IMG/VR virus record: IMGVR_UViG_3300021963_000021
Location: 299,944 to 363,943 of that record
Direction: 5' to 3' (one strand)
Length of the DNA: 64,000 nucleotides
Part shown: one piece after another, positions 2,796-50,784 of the stretch
Layout: each line of letters begins with the position of its first letter
How positions within the stretch are numbered: the first letter of the stretch is position 1
Translations under genes and position numbers: made by a program
The notes under the pieces: model-generated
The model's database searches: none
What the model was told of the DNA's origin: nothing
Seen by the model: only the letters and a program-made list of their open reading frames with translations

Positions 2796-3426
2796 TCTTA
2801 CAAATGTGTTCTAATCTTTCAATATGTTCGTACGCTCGCCACGGAGTCGTATCGATAGCAACTACACCGTGTCCTTTAATGCCTACAATATCGTAGGCAA
2901 CATTACCGTCTCTATCTAGTTGAAGATTCGTGTGGCACTGATCCGCAAGCTCTTGACTAATAGGCGGAACATCTCCGACATTGGGTGCTACTCGAGTATA
3001 ACGGTTAAGCTCCGGAAAAGCATCACTGATAGTACTAAGGTCGATACCGGCATGCATAGCCGCAATACTGTAAGTAGGATGTACATGTACAACTACTCTT
3101 ACCTCGTCCTTATGCTGACCCATTTCTTTTTGTAGACCAAAATGTAATGGTATCTCTCCGCTAGGTACTAGATTTTTACTGATGTCAGTATAGGGTACAT
3201 CTTCCCAAGAGTAGTTGAATGCCGCTGTTCCATATCCACTATGGATGCTTCTGTGTATAGCTATCTTCTTAAATTGGTCAGGTTGTAGTGTTTGCTTACG
3301 CACACCGCTTGGAGTAATGTAGAAGTGATCACGATCATGATGACGGATGCTGACGTTGCCATCACGACTGGTAATCCAATTACGCTTATAAGCGTCTACC
3401 ATAATATCACATATCGTTTCTAACAT
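2764..3426 (-). CDS. class II aldolase/adducin family protein (MtnB/FucA-like)
   Basis: RDGNVS, ITPSG, PSGEIPLH, HVHP metal motif, GHGVV. Confidence 0.88.
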   Translation of the reverse strand: MLETICDIMVDAYKRNWITSRDGNVSIRHHDRDHFYITPSGVRKQTLQPDQFKKIAIHRSIHSGYGTAAFNYSWEDVPYTDISKNLVPSGEIPLHFGLQKEMGQHKDEVRVVVHVHPTYSIAAMHAGIDLSTISDAFPELNRYTRVAPNVGDVPPISQELADQCHTNLQLDRDGNVAYDIVGIKGHGVVAIDTTPWRAYEHIERLEHICKIVLASGNYGK

Positions 3427-3958
3427 TTACATAATCCCAGTTTATTATTTTCCATTGATTTTCTAAATACTTTTTCTTGTCGTGTTGATAATCCAACGCC
3501 CAAGCATGTTCCCACCAATCAACTAATACTACTATATCTTTTTTTATTTCGTGATTCTTTATAGTTTTAATTTCGCCAGACTTAGAAAGATATACCCACC
3601 CACTACCTTGTATGCTCATGGCCACTTTGGTAAATTCTTCTTTAAACTTATCAAAGGATTTAAATTTTTCTTCAATAAGTTCTAGGGTCTTGCCGGATGG
3701 CTTATTGCTAGATTTTGGTGCTTGATATTGTTGGAACAGTATGTTATGTAAGAACACGCCAGCTTCATTGAAGTCAGGGTCACCTTCGCCTTTGTTGTAT
3801 CTGTCAGCATAGGTATGAGCTAGTTTACCATAGTGATAATCGATAGTATCCTCTGATATCGACGGATCTAGATCATCCTTGTCGTATGGCAATGCTTTGA
3901 TTTCTAATTTCTCAGCTTTGCCCTCTAACAGAAAATTTCGTATAAAGTTATAGGTCAT
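3407..3958 (-). CDS. sod: Fe/Mn superoxide dismutase
   Basis: HYGKL, HNILF, QGSGW, DWWEHAW metal-ligand motifs. Confidence 0.95.
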   Translation of the reverse strand: MTYNFIRNFLLEGKAEKLEIKALPYDKDDLDPSISEDTIDYHYGKLAHTYADRYNKGEGDPDFNEAGVFLHNILFQQYQAPKSSNKPSGKTLELIEEKFKSFDKFKEEFTKVAMSIQGSGWVYLSKSGEIKTIKNHEIKKDIVVLVDWWEHAWALDYQHDKKKYLENQWKIINWDYVNVRNDM

Positions 3959-16063: not shown

Positions 16064-16090
16064 GAAAAGCACCCTTCGGGGTGCTTTTTA
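16064..16090. terminator. bidirectional terminator
   Basis: aaaagcaccc-ttcg-gggtgctttt between convergent genes. Confidence 0.85.
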
Positions 16091-18749: not shown

Positions 18750-19712
18750 TTACCTTCCTAAACGAGGACGATCTTGAGCGATTTGTTGTTGGTTTCTTTG
18801 TTGTACGCTGTCTTGTTCTGGCCAGCTGTAAATGTAGTTGCCAAACTCATCACGCACTAACAACCAACGGATGCCGCCTGCGCTGTATTGCCTTATATCT
18901 GCTTGATAGCCCGGAATCGTTGTGTCAAAATCAATATTGCCGTCACCTAGATCATCGCCGTGATTGCGTACCCAGTTAGCCACTGCGTTTACTTCTTGTG
19001 TAGAGTTAGGCCCTTGTCCATTTAGATTACCAATCATCCAAATATCATTTGTTTCGGTGCGAGTAAAAGCACGGAATAAGTGTCTGCCTAGTGTACGGAT
19101 AGCACGATTCATATTCCCTGGCAAGTTTGCTACCTGATGGAAGTCGGGATTTTGTACACCAGCTCTGGTAAGATTAGCACCTGCTACTGCTGGTAGGTTT
19201 TCAGTGTCTACACGTACAGCAGGCACGTCTGCGTCTTCTGGTTCTGGGTATCCGGGATCATCTGGATCATTTTCTATGTCACGCATACGTCCTAGTAGAT
19301 CACGCATACGATCATTAGGGGCTATGTTGCCCGCAGCACGTTGAGTGTCACGCTGACTAGCACGTTGTTGTTGTGGAGCAGCTGGTTCTCCACGAGGTTC
19401 ATCTCTAGGTTCCGGTTCTGGAGTAGGTGCTGCTGGAAGATTAGCATCACTGGGTTGGCCAAAATAGTTGTCAAACGCTGACCAATCAGTTTTATCTTTA
19501 GTTTTGGTTTTCTTTTTATCTTCGTCTGCTTCGCGAACGTTTCGTGAACCAGTCTTGACGTCTTTGCCCTGCTCCTTGCGGAATTTGGCTACAAGACCGT
19601 TCTTACCATAATTGATCTCATAATCATCGTCACTGGGGTCCATGTTGGTCTTGACACCACTTGGACTTATATGTGTCTCTGTTTCTCTTAGATAATCTTT
19701 AAATGTTTTCAT
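18750..19712 (-). CDS. hypothetical protein, probable head-internal protein
   Basis: Start MKTFKDYLRE at 19712 resembles the T4 internal-protein capsid targeting sequence. Confidence 0.65.
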   Translation of the reverse strand: MKTFKDYLRETETHISPSGVKTNMDPSDDDYEINYGKNGLVAKFRKEQGKDVKTGSRNVREADEDKKKTKTKDKTDWSAFDNYFGQPSDANLPAAPTPEPEPRDEPRGEPAAPQQQRASQRDTQRAAGNIAPNDRMRDLLGRMRDIENDPDDPGYPEPEDADVPAVRVDTENLPAVAGANLTRAGVQNPDFHQVANLPGNMNRAIRTLGRHLFRAFTRTETNDIWMIGNLNGQGPNSTQEVNAVANWVRNHGDDLGDGNIDFDTTIPGYQADIRQYSAGGIRWLLVRDEFGNYIYSWPEQDSVQQRNQQQIAQDRPRLGR

Positions 19713-20524
19713 TCTGCGTTTTTCCCACACTTGGCACGTTTAGCGTTAGTCAGTGCGCCAAAGTCCACGGGCCATTCCTGTCCTGGCTGTAATTCTTTTG
19801 CGTTAGCAGGAAACTTGTAGTATACTCCTGCCTGTTTCTGTATATCTGCGATAGGCATGCGGAACTTAGTTAGATCGTTGCCTAGGTTAACATATGGTTT
19901 GGTATGTGGAAACGCCCAACCTGCTACAGCACCTGTTTGTTGATCAATGACAATTTTATAGTAGCCATGTGGAACGATAACTCCGTTGCCGATTACACCA
20001 TCACCAGCTCCATACAATGCCCCCACGTAGATAGTAAACGGACGATTCTGCTGAACTACCCACCCACGTATCGAGGTTTCTAGTAGTTTCCATATGCCAC
20101 GATTTAATGACCCGTGTTGTGGGTACATATTTGTCATTAGGAAACTCTCATACTCCACAATCTGTGACCAACTTAGGTCACCATCGGGAGCGGCATGTCC
20201 TTTGTCGTAGCCTGTGCCTGCGTAGTCATTAGGAGTAGCACCTCCAGGAACTGACTGATCCGCAACGAATGCGTTCGTACGGGGAAAGCATCCTAAAGCA
20301 TTTTGTGGAAGTAATGTGTAAGCTACGTAAGCAGGAATCTTTACAGGAGCATCATATGCTACTAGATATGCTTCACGGCAAATTAAACCAGCCTGACGAG
20401 CAGTTTGAGCTAATCCGTATGGACTATGAACTTGGCAGGATTGTACTGGTAGTGGAGCCCGTTGTTCCCAAGCATAGACTTGCGTCGAACAGACTAGTGC
20501 CAATAATAGTAGCAGTTTTCTCAT
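19709..20524 (-). CDS. DNA/RNA non-specific endonuclease (NucA/EndA family) with signal peptide
   Basis: YDKGHAAP, FLMTNMYPQ, LNRGIWKLLE, VPHGYYK; hydrophobic N-terminus. Confidence 0.92.
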   Translation of the reverse strand: MRKLLLLLALVCSTQVYAWEQRAPLPVQSCQVHSPYGLAQTARQAGLICREAYLVAYDAPVKIPAYVAYTLLPQNALGCFPRTNAFVADQSVPGGATPNDYAGTGYDKGHAAPDGDLSWSQIVEYESFLMTNMYPQHGSLNRGIWKLLETSIRGWVVQQNRPFTIYVGALYGAGDGVIGNGVIVPHGYYKIVIDQQTGAVAGWAFPHTKPYVNLGNDLTKFRMPIADIQKQAGVYYKFPANAKELQPGQEWPVDFGALTNAKRAKCGKNAE

Positions 20525-20555: not shown

Positions 20556-21179
20556 TTAGTTGGCTTTTTCTAAATGTTCTGCTTTATCCCATCCTAGTAT
20601 ATGCTTGGCTTTCCAGTGGTTTTGTTCAAATCCTTTAAGATCCTGCCAGCTATCTCTGCGATTCCATATATCTTTGGCCACAGTCAACCAATCAGTGTGA
20701 CGAACAATGTAGTCAAAATTTAGCATATAATTTTTAAAATACTCGTAGCTGCGACTGTCAAACTCTACGTGTATAACTTCGTAGACTGTGCCATCGCTGG
20801 CAATAGCATTTAGATCGAAATCAAATCCCCATTTGGTTTTTATGTCTAACAGCTGACGTGCTAGGGGATGTGTTTCTTGTAGATCAGTGAGCTGATCTCG
20901 GGCTTGTCCGCCGTATTCACAACGGCAAAGAAACATGCTGTGGTCTAAGAAAAGTCCTAGATCGTTGCGTTCTAATTCAAACCAGGGTTCTTGCCAACAG
21001 CAGTGATTTAGTATGGGATGATCAATAGGATGATTCATGGCAGCATAGTACTTGCGTTCTATACCGTTGAGTTCAAATCCGTCCTTGTCGAAGTATTTGA
21101 AATCAGCTGCGTCAATATCTGTGATCGCTTTAAAACATCGAGGGTCGGACATAAGTGTTACATTATGTCTGCGGAACAT
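20556..21179 (-). CDS. conserved phage hypothetical protein
   Basis: 207 aa, FDKDGFEL...KWGFDF. Confidence 0.65.
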   Translation of the reverse strand: MFRRHNVTLMSDPRCFKAITDIDAADFKYFDKDGFELNGIERKYYAAMNHPIDHPILNHCCWQEPWFELERNDLGLFLDHSMFLCRCEYGGQARDQLTDLQETHPLARQLLDIKTKWGFDFDLNAIASDGTVYEVIHVEFDSRSYEYFKNYMLNFDYIVRHTDWLTVAKDIWNRRDSWQDLKGFEQNHWKAKHILGWDKAEHLEKAN

Positions 21180-21349
21180 TAGCGGTATTTCTCTGCTTGT
21201 TCTCTACAATCAAAACACTGGCATTCTACGCAATCGCAGTCGTCTGTCATACAGCTATGCCCGCAGTGTTTGCCGCACCTACAGGTACAGCCTAGATTCT
21301 TATAAGGTTTATATGAATCGTTGTTATCATTCTGTTCTATCTTTGTCAT
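21179..21349 (-). CDS. Cys-rich metallothionein-like mini-protein (not in ORF track)
   Basis: 56 aa MTKIEQNDNNDSYKPYKNLGCTCRCGKHCGHSCMTDDCDCVECQCFDCREQAEKYR; 10 Cys + 2 His; GGAG upstream; TAATG coupling to next gene. Confidence 0.7.
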   Translation of the reverse strand: MTKIEQNDNNDSYKPYKNLGCTCRCGKHCGHSCMTDDCDCVECQCFDCREQAEKYR

Positions 21350-21749
21350 CTATTGCTCCACCATGTACCCATGCTGTACAGCTACGTGTGCCAGCACATT
21401 TAAAATGTAAAAAATTACAGTATCCTAGATCTGATTTTTCAATAGTGGCCATAGCATCTACGTTTTTGTATTCGCCTTTGATACCTGCTTCGATACAGGC
21501 CCACATCTTGTCACTGACATCGAAAGCAGCGCAGTTGCTACACAGCATGGTCTTTGCTGTCTTTTCGTCTATCTTCCATTCTTTAGCGGCGTCTTTCCAA
21601 TAGCTGCCTGGCTCATCAGGATTGGCAGGTCCATAATGATATTCGTCTATAGCCTTTTGTCTATTCTTTAAGTTAACATCTATGTCGTGTGTGGCGATAG
21701 GACAGCCTTTGTTGGCTGCTTCTACTATGTTGATATACTTGCGATACAT
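21327..21749 (-). CDS. Cys-containing conserved phage protein
   Basis: CSNC ... CNFLHFKCAGTRSC. Confidence 0.7.
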   Translation of the reverse strand: MYRKYINIVEAANKGCPIATHDIDVNLKNRQKAIDEYHYGPANPDEPGSYWKDAAKEWKIDEKTAKTMLCSNCAAFDVSDKMWACIEAGIKGEYKNVDAMATIEKSDLGYCNFLHFKCAGTRSCTAWVHGGAIDDKDRTE

Positions 21750-23927: not shown

Positions 23928-26900
23928 TTAATCCCAAGCACCGCCACTTTGTTGCCAAGCACCGTCTGTAAAGATTATTGTACAGAACGCAAGGCTGTCA
24001 ACGAAACTTGCGTTGGCGCTGTTGAATATCCTAAATGGAAATAATAGCCCATCGGTTCCTGTATAACTGCCAATTCTAAAATTAGCCACACCAACAAACA
24101 CAGCATTGGGTGTTATTCCATTTTGCGGAACGAGATACATGATCTGTCCTTCAACGCCATCTGCTAGTGTATAATTACCATCTGTGAGTTTGTTGATAGA
24201 TTTAGTTAGATCTATGGCTGTGTATGCTTGTGTGACTGTAACTACACTGATGTTAGCATTATGAGATCCACTGCCGCCCATATCTGCTGAGTTCAATGTT
24301 CCAATGGTATCACCTACTACGCTGTTTCCGCTAGTACTGATTACTGTGTAAGCAGGCACACCTGATGTAACTATCACAGTAAACGACACTGGACCTAGAG
24401 TAAATGGACCATAGTTTCCATCTATCAGATCGGTCCAACCTCCAGAATCTTGTAATGTAGCGGCTGGTCCAGTATCGTTGCCTGTGCCAGTCTTAGATAC
24501 TGTGCTTTTGACTACAGCACCTGGTAATGTTGTAGTACCGCTTGGTTCAAAACTCCAAGTTTTGTTGTTGGCAACAATTTGAACTTGACCTGCTGAAATT
24601 GCTCCACCGCCAGAACGGATACGAACATCACCGCCAGTGTAGGCGCTACTATATCCGCCGTCAATATGTACGTGGCCGCCTTCGTTGTAACCATTACCGC
24701 CTGCGATGTTTACATAACCACCGTATCCTGATGATACTCCATCAGCATCGCCCGCATAGATCTTAATGTCTCCACCATTGCTATCAGCATCACCTGCCCA
24801 TAGATAAACATCACCACCTTCACCTGCGCCATTGCCGCGTTGTCCTTGGATGATTAAACGTTGTGCGTTTTGATCAGTACCAGGAGTTGGTCCAGTGATA
24901 ATTACTTGTTGACTTGCGTCACCGAACTGTAAGACTTGACCAGATTGACTGCCGCCATTGTGTAAGTTCACTGTCAGAGTTGGGAATGTTACAGAACCGT
25001 TTTGACCAAATACCCAATCATATGACGTAGTAGTATCAGAGTTGTATGTGCGTATTTTAATATACCCCTGATGATTGATATCTACAAATTGAGTATCATC
25101 ACCCAGGATCAAGTCGCCTGTGCTGTCAGTACCTTTACCTGCGGCAATGTGTATGTGCGGAGCATCCTGAGCCAGCGTTGGGTAAATGTCGATATACTGT
25201 CCGTAGTTTCTAAAACTTTGACTAATACTATTGGTATCAACGTGTGGTATTATGCTGATGCGACCATAGGAGAAGTTTTCTTCAGCGGCGCCGTTTCCTC
25301 TAATTTCGTTACCACTGAAACTGATAGTTCCAGTGGCCTCACCTGGTCTGTACAAGGTAGGTATTAGGAATTCAGAGTTGTCAACATCTGCGCCAAGAGC
25401 AGTGATACTAATAGCACCACTGATGTCACTGTCTGTTTTACCAGCATCATCTATAGTAAGATCGCTGGCTGAACTGTTTAACAGTCCTGAGAATGATGCT
25501 GGTGTATAGTCCCAGTCGCCTACAGTAAATGTAGTACCTTCGGTGTTAAACTGTGCTATCAAGGCATGTACCTGTTGTCCAGGATCACCAACTCCGCCGC
25601 CGATGGCCACGTAGCCATTCTTGACCGCGATGTTGCTGCCGCTGCCAGTGTTAGTATAGAAGCCACCGGCAAATGTCCAACTAGTAGTATTGTCTAATAG
25701 ACGTTGCCATGCTACCTGTCCATTTTCTAGATACTTGGCTACAACACAACTAAAGTCAGAGGTATCACCGTTGCCAGCGATGCCTGCTAGGTATAGATAA
25801 TCATCTGGTCCTATCGCTACACTGGTCGCCCAAGTATCACAGTTACCTACTACACGACGACTCCACTGTGCTGTACCCGAAGAATCAAACTTGACTAGAC
25901 TCATTGCGGTGTTAGTGCCGCCTTGACCGTTATCCTTTTGATATTGTCCAACTACATAGATATTACCTGCGCTGTCTATGTCAGCATCTGCTCCGTTACA
26001 GTTATATCCTGTGTCAAACAATACTGCCTTTTGCCAAGCGATAGCGCCGTTGGTGTCATACTTGACTACCAGCATACGGTCTTCTGTGTCACCAGATTCG
26101 CCTAGTTGATCCATGTAACCAATGACTACGACTTCACCGCTGGGTCCAACAGCCATACCATAGGCTTCTTCGTCGGACTGTCCATCTAAGACCCTAGCCC
26201 ATAGTATTGTTCCGTCTTCAAATAACAGTTTAATAACAGTTACTTGATCATCTGTGCCATTATAAGCATAACCAACTATAACCGCGTCTCCGTTACTGCT
26301 TATGTCAATGACACCGTTGGTGCTTGAGTATCCAAAGTCATAGACACTACTCCAATTGATAGTACCGTCAATCAGGCTTAATTGTGTTACGGTCGTTCTA
26401 TCATAGTCTCCTGATATCTTACCAGTGACATAGATCACACCGTTAGAAGAATCTACTGCTACACCCCAGCCATCTGTTGATCCAGCACCTTGATATCTGA
26501 CCTGCCATAACTTTGTGCCTGTGCTGGTAAACTTGGCCACAGAAGTATAGTTGTTGCCGCCCTGTGGATTGTAATGTACAAACAGGGCAATGATATTACC
26601 GTCACTGTCATATTCTATGCTGTTGGCGCTGCCTGGAACATCGTTATTTGTATCATTTGACTCAAATGTTGCTATCCAAACATTTTGATCTGAGGCAGTA
26701 CCGCCTGTTGGATCAGCGTAGGTCATTTCACCTGTTGTGGTATTGTAGTACACAGCCTTAGCGGTATTTTCTACGTCTTCACGAACTGGTTTAACAAACA
26801 AACCAGCACCAGTTGGATCTAAATTCTCACCTGTTGCGTTCAGTGTGATGCTGTTGTCTTCAGCAAAAGTGTATGCGGCTCTTGCGCCAATAGCGATAGC

Positions 26901-27686
26901 GTTCTCACCTTGAGGTGCTTCTGTTTCATTCCAACCTGCTTTAGCACCAATGTACACACCACCTGCTTTACTGTTGTAACCAACATCGTCGTTACCGATA
27001 GCAATAACACCCGCACGATGTGGGTCATGGATACCCTGTCCTAGACTAATGCCAGGCCCTAAATCTGTTGGACCAACATTAACACCTTGATATATTCTTA
27101 GCGTGATATCTTCATTGATGTTTAACTCATAGCGAGTGTCGCCTTCTGCTTCTGGGGTAAAATCAGTGTTGGCTTGTAATCCGTCAATACCATTAACTGA
27201 GAGTCCCACTAAGCCAGGTTCTATTTCTGTAACTGTACCGTTGATTAAAATTTCTGTGACATTTTCTACGCTAGGACCTTGACCGTTACCTACTGATATA
27301 GATCCGCCACCGATTTGACTAGTAGCATTTGAATCTTCTGGGTCTTCTGCTTCATTTTCTTCGCCTGGATTGATAACTTTGGTAGCAACAAACTTGCCGT
27401 TAACGTTGGTAAGTTTAATATTGTCAAGATAGATACTGCCGCCTGCGGTGTAAACGTGACGCCACTGTTTTGTTGGAGATCCTAAATCGTAAGTATTATC
27501 TGCGTCTGGAACAATGTTTGTCTTGGGATCGTAAATGCTGGGTAACAATGACCATATAGTTGAACCGTCACCAATTTTTAATATACCGTTAGTGGTATCG
27601 TAACCTGGTTCACCTTGCGCTAGTACTGGATCTTCTGACGCCCAGTTAGCTGCTGTGTCTCTTCTTAATTTAATCTGCGTTGCCAT
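23928..27686 (-). CDS. long tail fibre/receptor-binding protein
   Basis: Mtd-like N-terminus IKLRRDTAANWASEDPVLAQGEPGYDT; beta-propeller repeats (KYDTNGAIAWQK); Gly-rich GGxVxIxGG repeats. Confidence 0.85.
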   Translation of the reverse strand: MATQIKLRRDTAANWASEDPVLAQGEPGYDTTNGILKIGDGSTIWSLLPSIYDPKTNIVPDADNTYDLGSPTKQWRHVYTAGGSIYLDNIKLTNVNGKFVATKVINPGEENEAEDPEDSNATSQIGGGSISVGNGQGPSVENVTEILINGTVTEIEPGLVGLSVNGIDGLQANTDFTPEAEGDTRYELNINEDITLRIYQGVNVGPTDLGPGISLGQGIHDPHRAGVIAIGNDDVGYNSKAGGVYIGAKAGWNETEAPQGENAIAIGARAAYTFAEDNSITLNATGENLDPTGAGLFVKPVREDVENTAKAVYYNTTTGEMTYADPTGGTASDQNVWIATFESNDTNNDVPGSANSIEYDSDGNIIALFVHYNPQGGNNYTSVAKFTSTGTKLWQVRYQGAGSTDGWGVAVDSSNGVIYVTGKISGDYDRTTVTQLSLIDGTINWSSVYDFGYSSTNGVIDISSNGDAVIVGYAYNGTDDQVTVIKLLFEDGTILWARVLDGQSDEEAYGMAVGPSGEVVVIGYMDQLGESGDTEDRMLVVKYDTNGAIAWQKAVLFDTGYNCNGADADIDSAGNIYVVGQYQKDNGQGGTNTAMSLVKFDSSGTAQWSRRVVGNCDTWATSVAIGPDDYLYLAGIAGNGDTSDFSCVVAKYLENGQVAWQRLLDNTTSWTFAGGFYTNTGSGSNIAVKNGYVAIGGGVGDPGQQVHALIAQFNTEGTTFTVGDWDYTPASFSGLLNSSASDLTIDDAGKTDSDISGAISITALGADVDNSEFLIPTLYRPGEATGTISFSGNEIRGNGAAEENFSYGRISIIPHVDTNSISQSFRNYGQYIDIYPTLAQDAPHIHIAAGKGTDSTGDLILGDDTQFVDINHQGYIKIRTYNSDTTTSYDWVFGQNGSVTFPTLTVNLHNGGSQSGQVLQFGDASQQVIITGPTPGTDQNAQRLIIQGQRGNGAGEGGDVYLWAGDADSNGGDIKIYAGDADGVSSGYGGYVNIAGGNGYNEGGHVHIDGGYSSAYTGGDVRIRSGGGAISAGQVQIVANNKTWSFEPSGTTTLPGAVVKSTVSKTGTGNDTGPAATLQDSGGWTDLIDGNYGPFTLGPVSFTVIVTSGVPAYTVISTSGNSVVGDTIGTLNSADMGGSGSHNANISVVTVTQAYTAIDLTKSINKLTDGNYTLADGVEGQIMYLVPQNGITPNAVFVGVANFRIGSYTGTDGLLFPFRIFNSANASFVDSLAFCTIIFTDGAWQQSGGAWD

Positions 27687-39305: not shown

Positions 39306-39592
39306 TGCTACAACTAAGATTTGAACTAAAGAATCCTTGGTCTAAAGATCGTTTTAAGAATCTAGGCTGTGTCAGCGGACGCATTTCCAAGAATAAAGCG
39401 TGGGAATTAGAACACACATTCTATGATGGTCTCATAGCAGACTGTGAGTTTAAGTTCACGACCAAAGAAGATCATGCTGGTCTAAACATTATGATAGGTG
39501 TTCTAGGCTACGCTGTTCATTTCAGCATCTACGATACTAGACACTGGGACTACGAAAACAACTGTTGGCAAGTTTATGAAGATTTGCGCTAG
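39305..39592 (+). CDS. hypothetical protein whose TAG stop lies inside the tRNA
   Basis: 95 aa; ends GATTTGCGC-TAG, with GCGCTAG as the tRNA acceptor 5' strand. Confidence 0.7.
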   Translation: MLQLRFELKNPWSKDRFKNLGCVSGRISKNKAWELEHTFYDGLIADCEFKFTTKEDHAGLNIMIGVLGYAVHFSIYDTRHWDYENNCWQVYEDLR

Positions 39593-39660
39593 AAGCCTAA
39601 TGGTCAGGCACGGGTCTCTAAAGCCCAGGATAGCAGGTTCGATTCCTGTCTAGCGCACCA
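39586..39660 (+). tRNA. amber suppressor tRNA (anticodon CUA)
   Basis: Acceptor GCGCTAG/CTAGCGC + ACCA; D-arm GCCT/AGGC; anticodon arm GGGT-CTCTAAA-GCCC (CTA at 39618-39620); T-arm GCAGG-TTCGATT-CCTGT. Confidence 0.85.
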
Positions 39661-43491: not shown

Positions 43492-43528
43492 TTATACTCC
43501 AATAAAAAAGCCCCTTCCGGGGCTTTGA

Positions 43529-44203
43529 TTAATTTTTCTTTCTTATCTCTGTTCGGTAATACTGTTTAGCAGTAAGAATAACAGCACCAACAAATGGTAA
43601 TATCTTTTCTACAAAATCATGTAGTGGGTCATTCCATTTGTCAATAAAAGGTTCGTGTACTATCATATTGCCTGCCACATAGTATAAAACAAAAGCACCA
43701 ATGTAAATTGTGCTAGGATATTTATCAAGTATGTTAGCGACTAACGTGCTACCAAACAAGATGATAGGTACACTAATTAGTAGTCCAGCGATGATTAAAA
43801 TCCAATTACCACTTGCGGCACCTGCGATTGCTAGTGCGTTATCTAAGCCCATGACAGCATCTGCCATTACGATTGTGCCCATTGCTCCCCAGAATGTTGT
43901 AGCAGCTCTGACATTACTATGATCGTTGTTGTTAGAAGTTAACTTCCAAGCGATGTAGATCAACGCAAGTCCGCCGACTAGTCTTAGCCCAGGAATCATT
44001 AGCAAATATGTAAGAGCCGCAACACAGGCAAAGCGAACACCTACAGCACCAAAGGTACCCCAAAGCATAGCTCGTTTACGTAGGGGTTCTGGTAGTTGTT
44101 TAGACGCCATTGCTATAACCAGTGCGTTTTCGCCTCCTAGTACAACGTCTATTAAGATGATGGCTATTAAAGCCCATAAGAATTGAAGTGAGAGAATTTC
44201 CAT
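43529..44203 (-). CDS. TerC/YjbE family membrane transporter (putative Mn2+ efflux)
   Basis: IDVVLGGENALVIA, ADAVMGLDNALAIAGAA, multiple TM helices. Confidence 0.92.
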   Translation of the reverse strand: MEILSLQFLWALIAIILIDVVLGGENALVIAMASKQLPEPLRKRAMLWGTFGAVGVRFACVAALTYLLMIPGLRLVGGLALIYIAWKLTSNNNDHSNVRAATTFWGAMGTIVMADAVMGLDNALAIAGAASGNWILIIAGLLISVPIILFGSTLVANILDKYPSTIYIGAFVLYYVAGNMIVHEPFIDKWNDPLHDFVEKILPFVGAVILTAKQYYRTEIRKKN

Positions 44204-46348: not shown

Positions 46349-46908
46349 AACCAGTTTGTCACAGCCTGTTTGGCTGATTCCTGTACAGCCCAATCCCACA
46401 TGTTTTCAGGGTCTGTTTCGTAGACAAAGTCTATGCTGGGCTGTGACAGTGTCAGCCAACTGTGACTGGGCTTCCAAGGACCTTCCCCTGATAGCTCGCC
46501 TGTGAGCTGCCCTGGTGCCCATCCAGCATGTCCAAAGTAGGCCTGCCAGTATTCGGGCTGTTCACCAGTCATCATGTATTCAAACATCTTGACATCTGAA
46601 GTCAAACCCAAACGTCCGTCAATGACCTGTGTTTTGTTGGTCTGCCAGTCTAGACTGTGTAGTAGGAACACCACGTGAGGCTGTACAGGTCCACCCCAAT
46701 AGAGCTGATGCTCTGCGATGTTGTCAGTCATGCCATCTACTAGACTGCCCACACAGTGTTCTGAGGGTCTGTTTAGCACTATGCCCATGCTGCCCTGATT
46801 GTCACTGTGATCTGTGAGCATGACCACAGTCTTGTGAAATCTAGTGTCTTTGTTAGTTGGGGGTGCGATCAAACAATCGCCAGGTTTGAGTTGTTGTGTT
46901 TTAATCAT
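46345..46908 (-). CDS. YqgE/AlgH (DUF179) family protein
   Basis: RFHKTVVM, GSMGIVLNRP, WGGPV, GHAGWAPGQL. Confidence 0.9.
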   Translation of the reverse strand: MIKTQQLKPGDCLIAPPTNKDTRFHKTVVMLTDHSDNQGSMGIVLNRPSEHCVGSLVDGMTDNIAEHQLYWGGPVQPHVVFLLHSLDWQTNKTQVIDGRLGLTSDVKMFEYMMTGEQPEYWQAYFGHAGWAPGQLTGELSGEGPWKPSHSWLTLSQPSIDFVYETDPENMWDWAVQESAKQAVTNWF

Positions 46909-50620: not shown

Positions 50621-50697
50621 GCCCCTATAGCTCAATAGGTAAGAGCACCCGACTCATAATCGGTAGGTTCCTGGTTCAAATCCAGGTGGGGGCACCA
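50621..50697 (+). tRNA. tRNA-Ile2 (CAU, lysidine-modified)
   Basis: Cloverleaf with CCGA-CTCATAA-TCGG anticodon arm typical of ileX, CCA end, adjacent tilS. Confidence 0.88.
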
Positions 50698-50700
50698 AAT

Positions 50701-50784
50701 GCCCGCGTGGTGGAAGTGGTAGACACAAGAGACTTAAAATCTCTCGCTTATGGCGTGCCGGTTCGAGTCCGGCCGCGGGCACCA
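50701..50784 (+). tRNA. tRNA-Leu (UAA)
   Basis: AGAGA-CTTAAAA-TCTCT, long variable arm, CCA end. Confidence 0.93.

What the first reader, a model, noticed from the sequence alone, without database searches (positions are those of the whole stretch)
21179..21349. Unlisted metallothionein-like mini-protein
Seen: a 56-aa ORF below the track cutoff with C-x-C-x-C-x2-H-C-x-H-x-C-x4-C-x-C-x2-C-x-C-x2-C (10 Cys, 2 His in 28 residues), an RBS and coupling to both neighbours. Known: bacterial metallothioneins (SmtA/BmtA) use Cys/His clusters. Inference: a phage metal buffer, consistent with the SOD and TerC/riboswitch genes, or a structural Zn cluster.
Basis: partly seen in the sequence, partly recalled or inferred. 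Interest (0 to 1): 0.6.

Follow-up and report, generated by a model that had tools for sequence, protein, structure and literature searches.

The report
Phage-only cysteine-cluster mini-protein gene
The 56-codon reading frame is a real, conserved gene found only in aquatic phages; it encodes a tiny protein that almost certainly folds around a few metal ions, belongs to no known metallothionein family, and often sits beside iron-sulfur and other metalloprotein genes.

Summary
Window 21179-21349 (-) encodes a 56-aa protein with 10 Cys and 2 His in 28 residues. It has a GGAG ribosome-binding site, overlaps the upstream gene by 23 nt, and shares a TAATG stop/start with the downstream gene.

It is a real gene. 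I found 128 distinct homologous loci in viral and metagenome contigs and none in about 185,000 prokaryote genomes. dN/dS is 0.17-0.28, and near-identical contigs occur in freshwater RNA libraries.

Eleven ligand positions are fixed: nine Cys, one His, and one position that is Cys or His. There are two subtypes: A (as here) and B (9 Cys + 3 His, mostly missed by gene callers).

No Pfam, PHROG, NCBIfam, PADLOC or PDB match exists, and the bacterial metallothionein model (PF02069) fails. AlphaFold gives no confident metal-free fold.

The gene moves between contexts. It often precedes an orphan-fold 207-aa protein and follows a 7-Cys 140-aa protein. In three divergent lineages it directly precedes IscU or A-type carrier genes, and in one lineage a fatty-acid desaturase.

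Best reading (0.4): a self-contained metal-cluster mini-protein that serves phage metalloproteins, not a bulk metal buffer. Metal identity and role are untested.

The parts
21179..21349 (-). Mini-protein gene, 56 codons plus stop (type A member of the family)
   Evidence: ORF list and sequence. Homologs. Purifying selection. RNA-library contigs lie over it at 97-99% identity.
21206..21289 (-). Cys/His core, residues 21-48. Fixed ligand positions are C21 C23 C/H25 H28 C29 C33 C38 C40 C43 C45 C48.
   Evidence: Translation. Invariant columns in 37 and in 52 aligned sequences.
21356..21359 (-). Shine-Dalgarno-like GGAG, 6 nt before the ATG, inside the coding end of the upstream gene
   Evidence: Read directly from the minus strand. 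The same arrangement occurs in L019.
21327..21349 (-). 23-nt overlap between the end of the 140-aa gene and the start of the mini gene (different frames)
   Evidence: The overlap explains why the N-terminus M-T-K-T/I-E-Q is conserved wherever the mini follows the 140-aa gene.
21177..21181 (-). TAATG: the mini gene's stop overlaps the start of the 207-aa gene (translational coupling)
   Evidence: In 80 loci seeded with the 207-aa gene, about 48 have a mini ORF ending within 0 to 12 nt of that gene's start.
21327..21749 (-). Upstream neighbour H140: a 140-aa protein with 7 invariant Cys, very strongly conserved
   Evidence: Alignment A6. More than 6000 clusters at 75-89% identity, all unnamed. 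GenBank depositors-46% identical phage proteins 'high potential iron-sulfur protein', but there is no Pfam or PDB sequence support.
20556..21179 (-). Downstream neighbour F207: a 207-aa protein with an orphan fold and conserved His/Cys/Asp/Glu residues
   Evidence: 731 clusters at E<=0.001, the 120 listed all without a Pfam family. AlphaFold pLDDT 92. No PDB, Atlas or named viral fold match. Conserved C15 H59 C61 H80 H137 H161.

Best explanation
The ORF is a real phage gene for a small, acidic, self-contained metalloprotein of a virus-only family.

Its 28-residue core carries eleven fixed ligand positions: nine Cys, one His, and one Cys-or-His. Type B carries 9 Cys + 3 His. The peptide can therefore only fold by wrapping three or four metal ions into a compact cluster, as a metallothionein domain does. 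That leaves a loose N-terminal tail and a short C-terminal helix.

It is translated together with whatever accessory gene lies behind it. Here that is the orphan-fold F207, with the 7-Cys H140 in front. In related phages it is IscU or an A-type Fe-S carrier, a di-iron fatty-acid desaturase, or other unknown 200-aa proteins. The core stays almost unchanged while these neighbours vary.

The most likely job is therefore a generic one: handing metal (Fe or Zn) or electrons to phage-encoded metalloproteins, above all the phage's iron-sulfur proteins. Bulk metal buffering is less likely.

Shown: the gene is real, the ligand pattern is conserved, it is virus-only, the synteny and coupling hold, and it is present in RNA libraries. 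Inferred: metal binding, the number and kind of metal, and the hand-over role.
For: - Gene reality. Near-identical contigs in two freshwater metatranscriptome libraries cover the ORF and bridge both gene junctions.
- Ligand pattern: invariant C21 C23 H28 C29 C33 C38 C40 C43 C45 C48, with C/H at position 25. Type B has 9 Cys + 3 His invariant.
- No confident metal-free fold: pLDDT 59.8, only helix 46-54.
- Virus-only: no relative in 185,579 prokaryote species genomes. An all-length HMMER scan of 1.84 billion representatives found only 49-71-aa proteins, so no fusions.
- Generic rather than partner-specific role. Directly downstream genes differ: F207 in about 48 of 128 distinct loci, FamX in 13, FA_desaturase in 6, IscU or an A-type carrier in L010, L185 and L175/L178. 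FamX is not homologous to F207.
- On the F207 tree the mini needs at least 17 gains, losses or swaps, and the window's closest F207 relatives lack it within 3 kb.
- Iron-sulfur link: the mini-Isc adjacency recurs with three divergent mini subtypes. H140-mini lies 1.6 kb from IscU in G002. The order IscA-H140-PCD-mini-F207 occurs in L152.
- This phage encodes IscU and IscA but no IscS and no Fer2 ferredoxin.
- Phage IscU and A-type carriers are known auxiliary genes (PMC5332604).
Against: - No experiment or confident model shows metal binding or any partner contact. The complex prediction could not be run.
- The Cys spacing (C-x-C-x-C and C-x-C-x2-C-x-C-x2-C) is typical of Zn/Cd/Cu thiolate clusters. 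To my knowledge it is not found in any ferredoxin or rubredoxin.
- 72 of the 128 distinct loci show neither H140 nor F207 within 4 kb, though many of those contigs are short. Only a handful of loci carry Isc genes next to the mini.
- Accessory-gene islands of aquatic phages hold many iron enzymes anyway, so adjacency could reflect an insertion hot spot at the end of the structural block rather than function.
- The 'HiPIP' label of H140 rests only on depositors' annotation.
Confidence: 0.4

Rival explanations
1. Metallothionein-like metal store or buffer. The protein soaks up or releases Zn, Cu or Cd in the infected cell and acts alone.
For: High Cys density with CxC and CxxC motifs. Eleven ligand positions equals the count in a Zn4 cluster of the SmtA or MT alpha-domain type (my knowledge). 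The last five Cys are spaced as in the vertebrate MT beta-domain (alignment). No metal-free fold. The gene occurs in many genomic contexts, as a stand-alone function would allow.
Against: No match to any metallothionein Pfam family; the PDB profile hit to MT1A has E=1.2 with strong composition bias. Non-ligand core residues are nearly invariant across deep divergence. It is acidic rather than Lys-rich. The gene is usually frame-coupled to the next gene. SOD and TerC are 18-22 kb away and no riboswitch was found.
Confidence: 0.2
2. A dedicated zinc-knot subunit of F207 (or of H140), made in fixed ratio by translational coupling and needed for that protein's stability or activity.
For: TAATG overlap with F207 here. 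Adjacency to F207 in about 48 of 128 distinct loci, including the deeply divergent F207 clade (30% identity) and in either gene order.
Against: 25 of 80 F207 loci lack the mini within 3 kb, including the window's six closest F207 relatives. In G002 the mini stays with H140 while F207 is 12 kb away. Unrelated genes take F207's place behind the mini. F207's Cys/His pattern does not differ with or without the mini.
Confidence: 0.15
3. A zinc-knotted binder of a constant host protein (host take-over or counter-defence). This would explain an invariant surface despite changing phage neighbours.
For: Small, virus-only, mobile accessory gene with frequent gain and loss. The surface residues are conserved.
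Against: No match in PADLOC or any anti-defence family. It lies in a late/structural operon rather than an early region. The recurrent link to Fe-S genes would be left unexplained.
Confidence: 0.12
4. Not a metalloprotein: a disulfide-knotted secreted peptide or a precursor of a modified peptide.
For: Cys-rich and short.
Against: The N-terminus is hydrophilic, with no signal peptide or membrane segment. There is an invariant His and a Cys/His swap. No modifying enzyme recurs next to it. The core, not a leader, is the conserved part.
Confidence: 0.04
5. A chance ORF, or conservation mirrored from the opposite strand.
For: A 183-aa ORF lies on the + strand over the same DNA (21052..21603).
Against: dN/dS is 0.17-0.28 in the minus-strand frame, with synonymous TGT/TGC switching at every Cys. 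The mini keeps its frame in loci where the neighbours differ.
Confidence: 0.01

Closest known systems
Bacterial metallothioneins SmtA/BmtA (Pfam PF02069)
   Same: About 56 residues. Mixed Cys/His ligands. Eleven ligand positions, equal to the 9 Cys + 2 His of the Zn4 cluster (my knowledge). Fold expected to depend on metal.
   Different: No sequence match. Different Cys spacing. Acidic, with strongly conserved non-ligand residues. Found only in phages.
Vertebrate metallothionein beta-domain (M3Cys9 cluster)
   Same: The last five Cys follow C-x-C-x2-C-x-C-x2-C, as at the end of the beta-domain (alignment). No regular secondary structure is predicted in the core.
   Different: The hit has E=1.2 and is driven by composition. 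The mini has an invariant His, two extra Cys and an acidic surface. No common descent is indicated.
Rubredoxin and small ferredoxins (electron donors to AlkB/desaturase-type di-iron enzymes and to ISC Fe-S assembly)
   Same: Size (about 50-55 aa) and acidity. Gene position directly upstream of a FA_desaturase gene or of IscU/A-type carrier genes. The phage has no Fer2 ferredoxin of its own.
   Different: Neither the CxxCG knuckle pair nor the CxxCxxCxxxCP motif is present. No Pfam match. Iron binding is untested.
Zn3Cys9 cluster domains (CXC/tesmin, pre-SET)
   Same: A dense run of Cys, including C-x-C, that could share bridging thiolates round three Zn ions (my knowledge).
   Different: No Pfam match. 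Those are domains of eukaryotic chromatin proteins; this is a free-standing phage protein with a His ligand.

Membership tests
Bacterial metallothionein SmtA/BmtA (PF02069 Metallothio_Pro) | Sequence matches the family model | tested here: not met
   hmmscan of the protein found no family at E<=1. A six-frame search of the whole genome with PF02069 found no match at E<=1, while the control Synechococcus elongatus scored above the cut-off.
Bacterial metallothionein SmtA/BmtA (PF02069 Metallothio_Pro) | Eleven Cys/His ligands forming a Zn4 cluster | tested here: inconclusive
   Eleven conserved ligand positions exist, and 12 in type B. Their spacing differs from SmtA, and the cluster geometry cannot be derived from a model with pLDDT 59.8.
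Metallothioneins in the operational sense | Small size and high Cys content with CxC/CxxC motifs | tested here: met
   56 aa, 10 Cys (18%), 36% within the core. CxC and CxxC motifs are present.
Metallothioneins in the operational sense | Binds several metal ions in thiolate clusters | not testable with these tools
   Needs ICP-MS or native mass spectrometry on purified protein.
Rubredoxin (PF00301) and 4Fe-4S ferredoxins (PF00037 and relatives) | Family model match and the CxxCG pair or CxxCxxCxxxCP motif | tested here: not met
   No Pfam family at E<=1. The motifs are absent from the sequence.
CXC/tesmin (PF03638) and pre-SET (PF05033) Zn3Cys9 domains | Family model match | tested here: not met
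   No Pfam family at E<=1. The profile search against PDB chains found only MT1A at E=1.2.
HiPIP (for the upstream 140-aa neighbour, as named in GenBank records) | Match to the HiPIP family model or to solved HiPIP chains | tested here: not met
   No Pfam family at E<=1. No PDB chain matched by sequence or by profile. None of the 120 best of more than 6000 homologs carries a Pfam domain or a name. Seven invariant Cys remain unexplained.

The most novel reading that the evidence does not exclude
The mini-protein is a new kind of iron or iron-sulfur mini-carrier. It supplies electrons or iron to phage-encoded IscU/A-type carriers, di-iron desaturases and the H140/F207 pair. In effect it would be a virus-specific stand-in for the ferredoxin of the ISC system, built on a metallothionein-like Cys/His scaffold of under 60 residues.
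Probability: 0.17. Interest if true: 0.75.

Novelty: new variant of a known kind. Interest (0 to 1): 0.5.

Why it matters
Small Cys-rich metal-binding proteins are a known kind, but this family is unrelated in sequence to any described one and is restricted to phages. It is widespread in freshwater, estuarine and marine viromes, and gene callers largely miss it because it overlaps the preceding gene.

Its repeated position in front of phage IscU/A-type carrier genes, a desaturase and two very abundant uncharacterised phage proteins gives a concrete, cheap test: express it, then measure metal content, colour and EPR signal. That test could show how phages equip their own metalloproteins during infection. 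It would also give a first functional handle on H140 (more than 6000 clusters) and F207 (more than 700 clusters), which have no annotation at all.

Tried and rejected
Family and structure searches on the mini-protein:
- Pfam, PHROGs, NCBIfam and PADLOC gave nothing for the mini, F207 or H140.
- tblastn of the mini against 50,697 phage records gave only a chance hit at E=9.
- The profile search against PDB sequences gave only MT1A at E=1.2 with high bias, which I take as composition and spacing, not homology.
- AlphaFold of the mini with 37 sequences gave pLDDT 59.8. Foldseek on that model gave no hit and the protein Atlas gave no lead.

Searches on the neighbours:
- F207 has a confident model but no PDB match by Foldseek and a best VIA Z of 3.4. 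Atlas TM was at most 0.41, and the BFVD hits are uncharacterised phage proteins only. The Atlas feature hit to DUF3626 (0.90, 158 shared features) is too weak to use.
- The F207 profile hit phycobilisome linker proteins CpcN/CpcJ (E=1.2e-5, summed over six weak repeats of one 35-residue stretch). I reject it as chance, because the model puts beta-strands there.
- H140 as a HiPIP: no sequence support, and the DSL-LC01 paper does not discuss it.
- FamX, which takes F207's slot in other phages, is not homologous to F207 by hhalign (probability 0.9%).
- F207's Cys/His pattern does not differ between loci with and without the mini.

Other searches:
- Two scans of 185,579 prokaryote genomes found no relative. 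The combined alignment A4 was too variable to scan with.
- No riboswitch or other RNA family at the locus or near TerC. No Cu/Zn or Ni SOD.
- No Terminase_6C match, so the phage was not placed taxonomically.
- Literature searches for a phage metallothionein or phage HiPIP found nothing relevant.

Full report
**1. The observation**

Window 21179..21349 (minus strand) is an ATG-started ORF of 56 codons. On the minus strand a GGAG lies six bases before the ATG. The start lies 23 nt inside the end of the upstream 140-aa ORF (21327..21749). The TAA stop shares its last A with the ATG of the downstream 207-aa ORF (20556..21179), reading TAATG.

The window is the last 64 kb of a 363,943-bp virus record rated complete. 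In that genome only two of 2861 ORFs of 30 aa or more reach ten Cys within 30 residues. The other has a GTG start and was not examined further.

**2. It is a real gene**

Sequence searches found:
- three close proteins in ENA assemblies;
- 18 representative proteins of 49-71 aa in a full HMMER scan of 1.84 billion representatives, none longer, so no fusions;
- 16 IMG/VR loci.

Later scans seeded with the mini-protein itself added 80 type B loci in IMG/VR and 80 type A loci in JGI metagenomes. Together these give 128 distinct loci.

Pairwise dN/dS is 0.28 (type A, 44 pairs) and 0.17 (type B, 125 pairs). Every conserved Cys codon alternates freely between TGT and TGC. Selection therefore acts on this frame, not on the 183-aa ORF on the opposite strand.

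Contigs from two freshwater metatranscriptome libraries lie over the ORF at 97-99% identity and bridge both gene junctions. Contigs cannot show strand and RNA libraries can hold DNA, so this is only modest support for expression.

Runs that hold the stretch are marine (the likely source), estuarine, riverine and freshwater. No relative was found in one genome each of 185,579 prokaryote species. The family looks virus-only.

**3. Anatomy of the family**

In 52 aligned members the invariant columns are C21, C23, H28, C29, C33, C38, C40, C43, C45 and C48. G30 and E42 are nearly invariant. Position 25 is Cys in most members and His in the rest.

There are two subtypes:
- Type A, as in the window: C-x-C-x-[C/H]-x2-H-C-x3-C-x4-C-x-C-x2-C-x-C-x2-C.
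- Type B: C-x2-C-x-H-x2-H-C-x3-C-x4-C-D-H-C-x2-C-x-C-x2-C, with nine Cys and three His invariant.

A Cys/His exchange at one fixed site, and a gain of His where Cys is lost, is what metal ligands do. Disulfide partners do not behave this way.

Eleven or twelve ligands in under 30 residues implies one of two arrangements. Either three separate tetrahedral sites interleave, or a thiolate-bridged cluster holds three or four ions. The count of eleven equals that of the Zn4 clusters of SmtA and the MT alpha-domain (my knowledge). The last five Cys are spaced as at the end of the vertebrate MT beta-domain (alignment).

AlphaFold with 37 sequences gives no confident fold: pLDDT 59.8, with only a helix at residues 46-54. 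That fits a fold that needs metal. The N-terminus is hydrophilic, so there is no signal peptide. Type B is strongly acidic.

Where the gene follows the 140-aa gene, its first residues (M-T-K-T/I-E-Q) are fixed by the overlap with that gene's conserved C-terminus. Elsewhere a different conserved N-terminal motif appears: M-E-N-[FY]-[IV]-D-D-x-[DE]-A-Y.

**4. It belongs to no known family**

Pfam, PHROGs, NCBIfam and PADLOC give nothing at E<=1. PF02069, the bacterial metallothionein model, finds nothing in any frame of the genome, while the Synechococcus control scores above the cut-off. A profile search of PDB sequences gives only a metallothionein-1A fusion at E=1.2 with heavy composition bias. 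The Atlas and Foldseek give nothing. I found no paper on a phage metallothionein.

**5. Neighbours in the window**

The gene lies in a long, tightly packed minus-strand block:
- a tail-fibre-like 1252-aa protein with an Mtd_N domain;
- two small ORFs;
- a 540-aa virion structural protein (phrog_1645, related to Synechococcus phages S-B05 and S-T4);
- H140, then the mini, then F207;
- a DNA/RNA non-specific endonuclease with a signal-like N-terminus;
- three unknown proteins, ending at a hairpin near 16064-16089.

H140 has seven invariant Cys. It is extraordinarily conserved and abundant: more than 6000 clusters, 75-89% identity among the best 120, all unnamed. GenBank depositors-46% identical phage proteins 'high potential iron-sulfur protein'. 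I found no Pfam or PDB support for that name.

F207 has 731 clusters at E<=0.001. It folds with pLDDT 92 into a fold with no match in PDB or the Atlas; in BFVD it matches only uncharacterised phage proteins. It keeps C15, H59, C61, H80, H137 and H161, plus several Asp/Glu on adjacent strands. It may itself be a metalloenzyme.

**6. How tightly is the mini tied to these neighbours?**

Among 80 IMG/VR loci seeded with F207, 55 carry the mini motif and about 48 have it abutting the F207 start; 25 lack it within 3 kb. Many of the type B genes are uncalled in public assemblies, for example L019 3858..4001.

Gene order can change:
- F207 then mini in L003;
- mini, H140, then F207 in L070 and L079;
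- a GIY-YIG endonuclease between H140 and the mini in L015.

In one 112-kb record the mini stays with H140 while F207 lies 12 kb away.

On an F207 tree (quick IQ-TREE method, SH-aLRT support, midpoint root for drawing only) the labels A, B and none need at least 17 changes. Sister F207s carry different mini types (L015 A, L092 B, 97*). The window's F207 groups (97*) with six loci that lack the mini within 3 kb.

Among the 128 distinct mini-seeded loci:
- F207 is directly adjacent in about 48;
- H140 is directly upstream in about 26;
- 72 show neither within 4 kb, many of them on short contigs.

Other genes directly downstream are:
- FamX, about 210 aa, directly downstream in 13 loci, no Pfam family, not homologous to F207;
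- FamY, about 205 aa;
- a fatty-acid desaturase (PF00487), directly downstream in 6 loci of one mini lineage;
- iron-sulfur assembly genes (next section).

So the mini is a mobile accessory gene. It usually opens the accessory block behind the structural genes, and it is not an obligate subunit of F207.

**7. The iron-sulfur link**

In L010 the order is mini, IscU (NifU_N, 1.7e-54), IscA, with a second A-type carrier diverging upstream. In L185 the order is mini, IscU, IscA and an ErpA-like carrier, with overlapping frames. In L175-L178 a type B-like mini overlaps the start of an A-type carrier. These three minis belong to clearly different subtypes, so the association recurs across the family.

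Further links:
- In G002, H140-mini lies 1.6 kb from IscU-IscA-IscA.
- In L152 the order is IscA, H140, PCD, mini, F207.
- A ferritin/Dps gene lies 1.2 kb upstream of the mini in L008.

The window's own genome encodes IscU and IscA at about 210.8 kb. It has no cysteine desulfurase and no Fer2 ferredoxin. Phage IscU and A-type carriers are known auxiliary genes of aquatic viruses (PMC5332604).

In cellular genomes, small iron proteins encoded next to ISC genes or next to AlkB/desaturase-type di-iron enzymes are typically their electron donors, ferredoxin or rubredoxin (my knowledge). That makes a carrier role a reasonable lead. The Cys spacing itself looks like a Zn/Cu-thiolate cluster rather than any known iron centre.

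**8. Weighing the readings**

That this is a real gene for a metal-cluster protein I hold at about 0.85-0.95. What it does is open.

The near-invariant core despite changing downstream partners argues for a generic task or a constant target. It argues against a subunit tailored to F207.

The recurrent iron-sulfur and di-iron neighbours, the acidity, and the absence of a phage ferredoxin favour a metal- or electron-handing helper for phage metalloproteins (0.4 for this class of explanation; 0.17 for the sharper claim that it is an iron-based ferredoxin substitute). Rivals:
- a free metallothionein-like buffer, 0.2;
- a dedicated F207/H140 subunit, 0.15;
- a binder of a host protein, 0.12;
- a non-metal peptide, 0.04;
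- a chance ORF, 0.01.

The SOD is an Fe/Mn type at window ~3422-3700. TerC is at ~43655-44164. Both are about 18-22 kb away. Rfam finds no riboswitch in the window at gathering score, or near TerC at E<=1.

**9. What could not be done**

No tool here can place metals.

**10. Verdict**

It is a new, virus-only variant of the small Cys-rich metal-protein kind. It is widespread and largely unannotated, with a testable link to phage iron-sulfur biology. Interest 0.5.

Noticed in passing
window 21327-21749 (-): H140 is a 140-aa protein with seven invariant Cys. It has more than 6000 database clusters at 75-89% identity, all unnamed. It is called HiPIP only in a few GenBank phage records, with no Pfam or PDB support. 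It is one of the most conserved genes of this phage group and is uncharacterised.
   Followed up: partly
window 20556-21179 (-): F207 is a 207-aa protein with a confident AlphaFold model (pLDDT 92). It has no fold match in PDB or the Atlas and matches only uncharacterised phage proteins in BFVD. It keeps His/Cys/Asp/Glu on neighbouring strands, which suggests a metal site.
   Followed up: partly
L019 3858-4001; L025-L092 upstream of the F207 start: Type B mini genes (47-52 codons) are mostly not called in public assemblies because their start overlaps the end of H140. The protein databases therefore understate the size of the family.
   Followed up: yes
G000:C1:210855-211229 and the adjacent gene (outside the window; L102 1185-1878): The phage encodes IscU and an A-type carrier, but no cysteine desulfurase (PF00266) and no Fer2 ferredoxin.
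   Followed up: partly
window ~3422-3700 (-) and ~43655-44164 (-): An Fe/Mn-type superoxide dismutase and a TerC-family gene are present. No Cu/Zn SOD was found; the Ni SOD search found nothing but its controls also failed, so it is uninformative. No riboswitch was found by Rfam near TerC. There is only a sub-threshold Trp_leader-like hit at 43502-43595 (28.6 bits against a gathering score of 41).
   Followed up: partly
window 19709-20524 (-): A DNA/RNA non-specific endonuclease (PF01223, 1.5e-36) with a hydrophobic signal-like N-terminus. In related phages an SNase-like secreted nuclease takes the same position.
   Followed up: no
window 23928-27686 (-): A 1252-aa protein with an Mtd_N (major tropism determinant N-terminal) domain, probably a tail fibre.
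   Followed up: no
L195-L261 downstream of the mini: Two further unannotated families of about 200 aa, FamX and FamY, take the place of F207 between the mini and the nuclease gene. FamX is not homologous to F207 by hhalign.
   Followed up: partly
L015 4246-4965: A GIY-YIG/NUMOD3 homing endonuclease gene is inserted between H140 and the mini. This suggests the junction is an insertion hot spot.
   Followed up: no
window 46629-46817 (+) (G000 346572-346760): This is the only other ORF in the genome with 10 Cys in 30 residues. It has a GTG start and was not checked for conservation; it may be spurious.
   Followed up: no
window 39586-39657, 50621-50694, 50701-50781 (+): Three tRNA genes.
   Followed up: no
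window 21052-21603 (+): A 183-aa ORF antisense to the mini and H140. Its apparent conservation in related loci mirrors the minus-strand genes.
   Followed up: yes
window 16064-16089: A strong two-way hairpin followed by T runs on both strands. It is probably the terminator that closes the minus-strand block.
   Followed up: no
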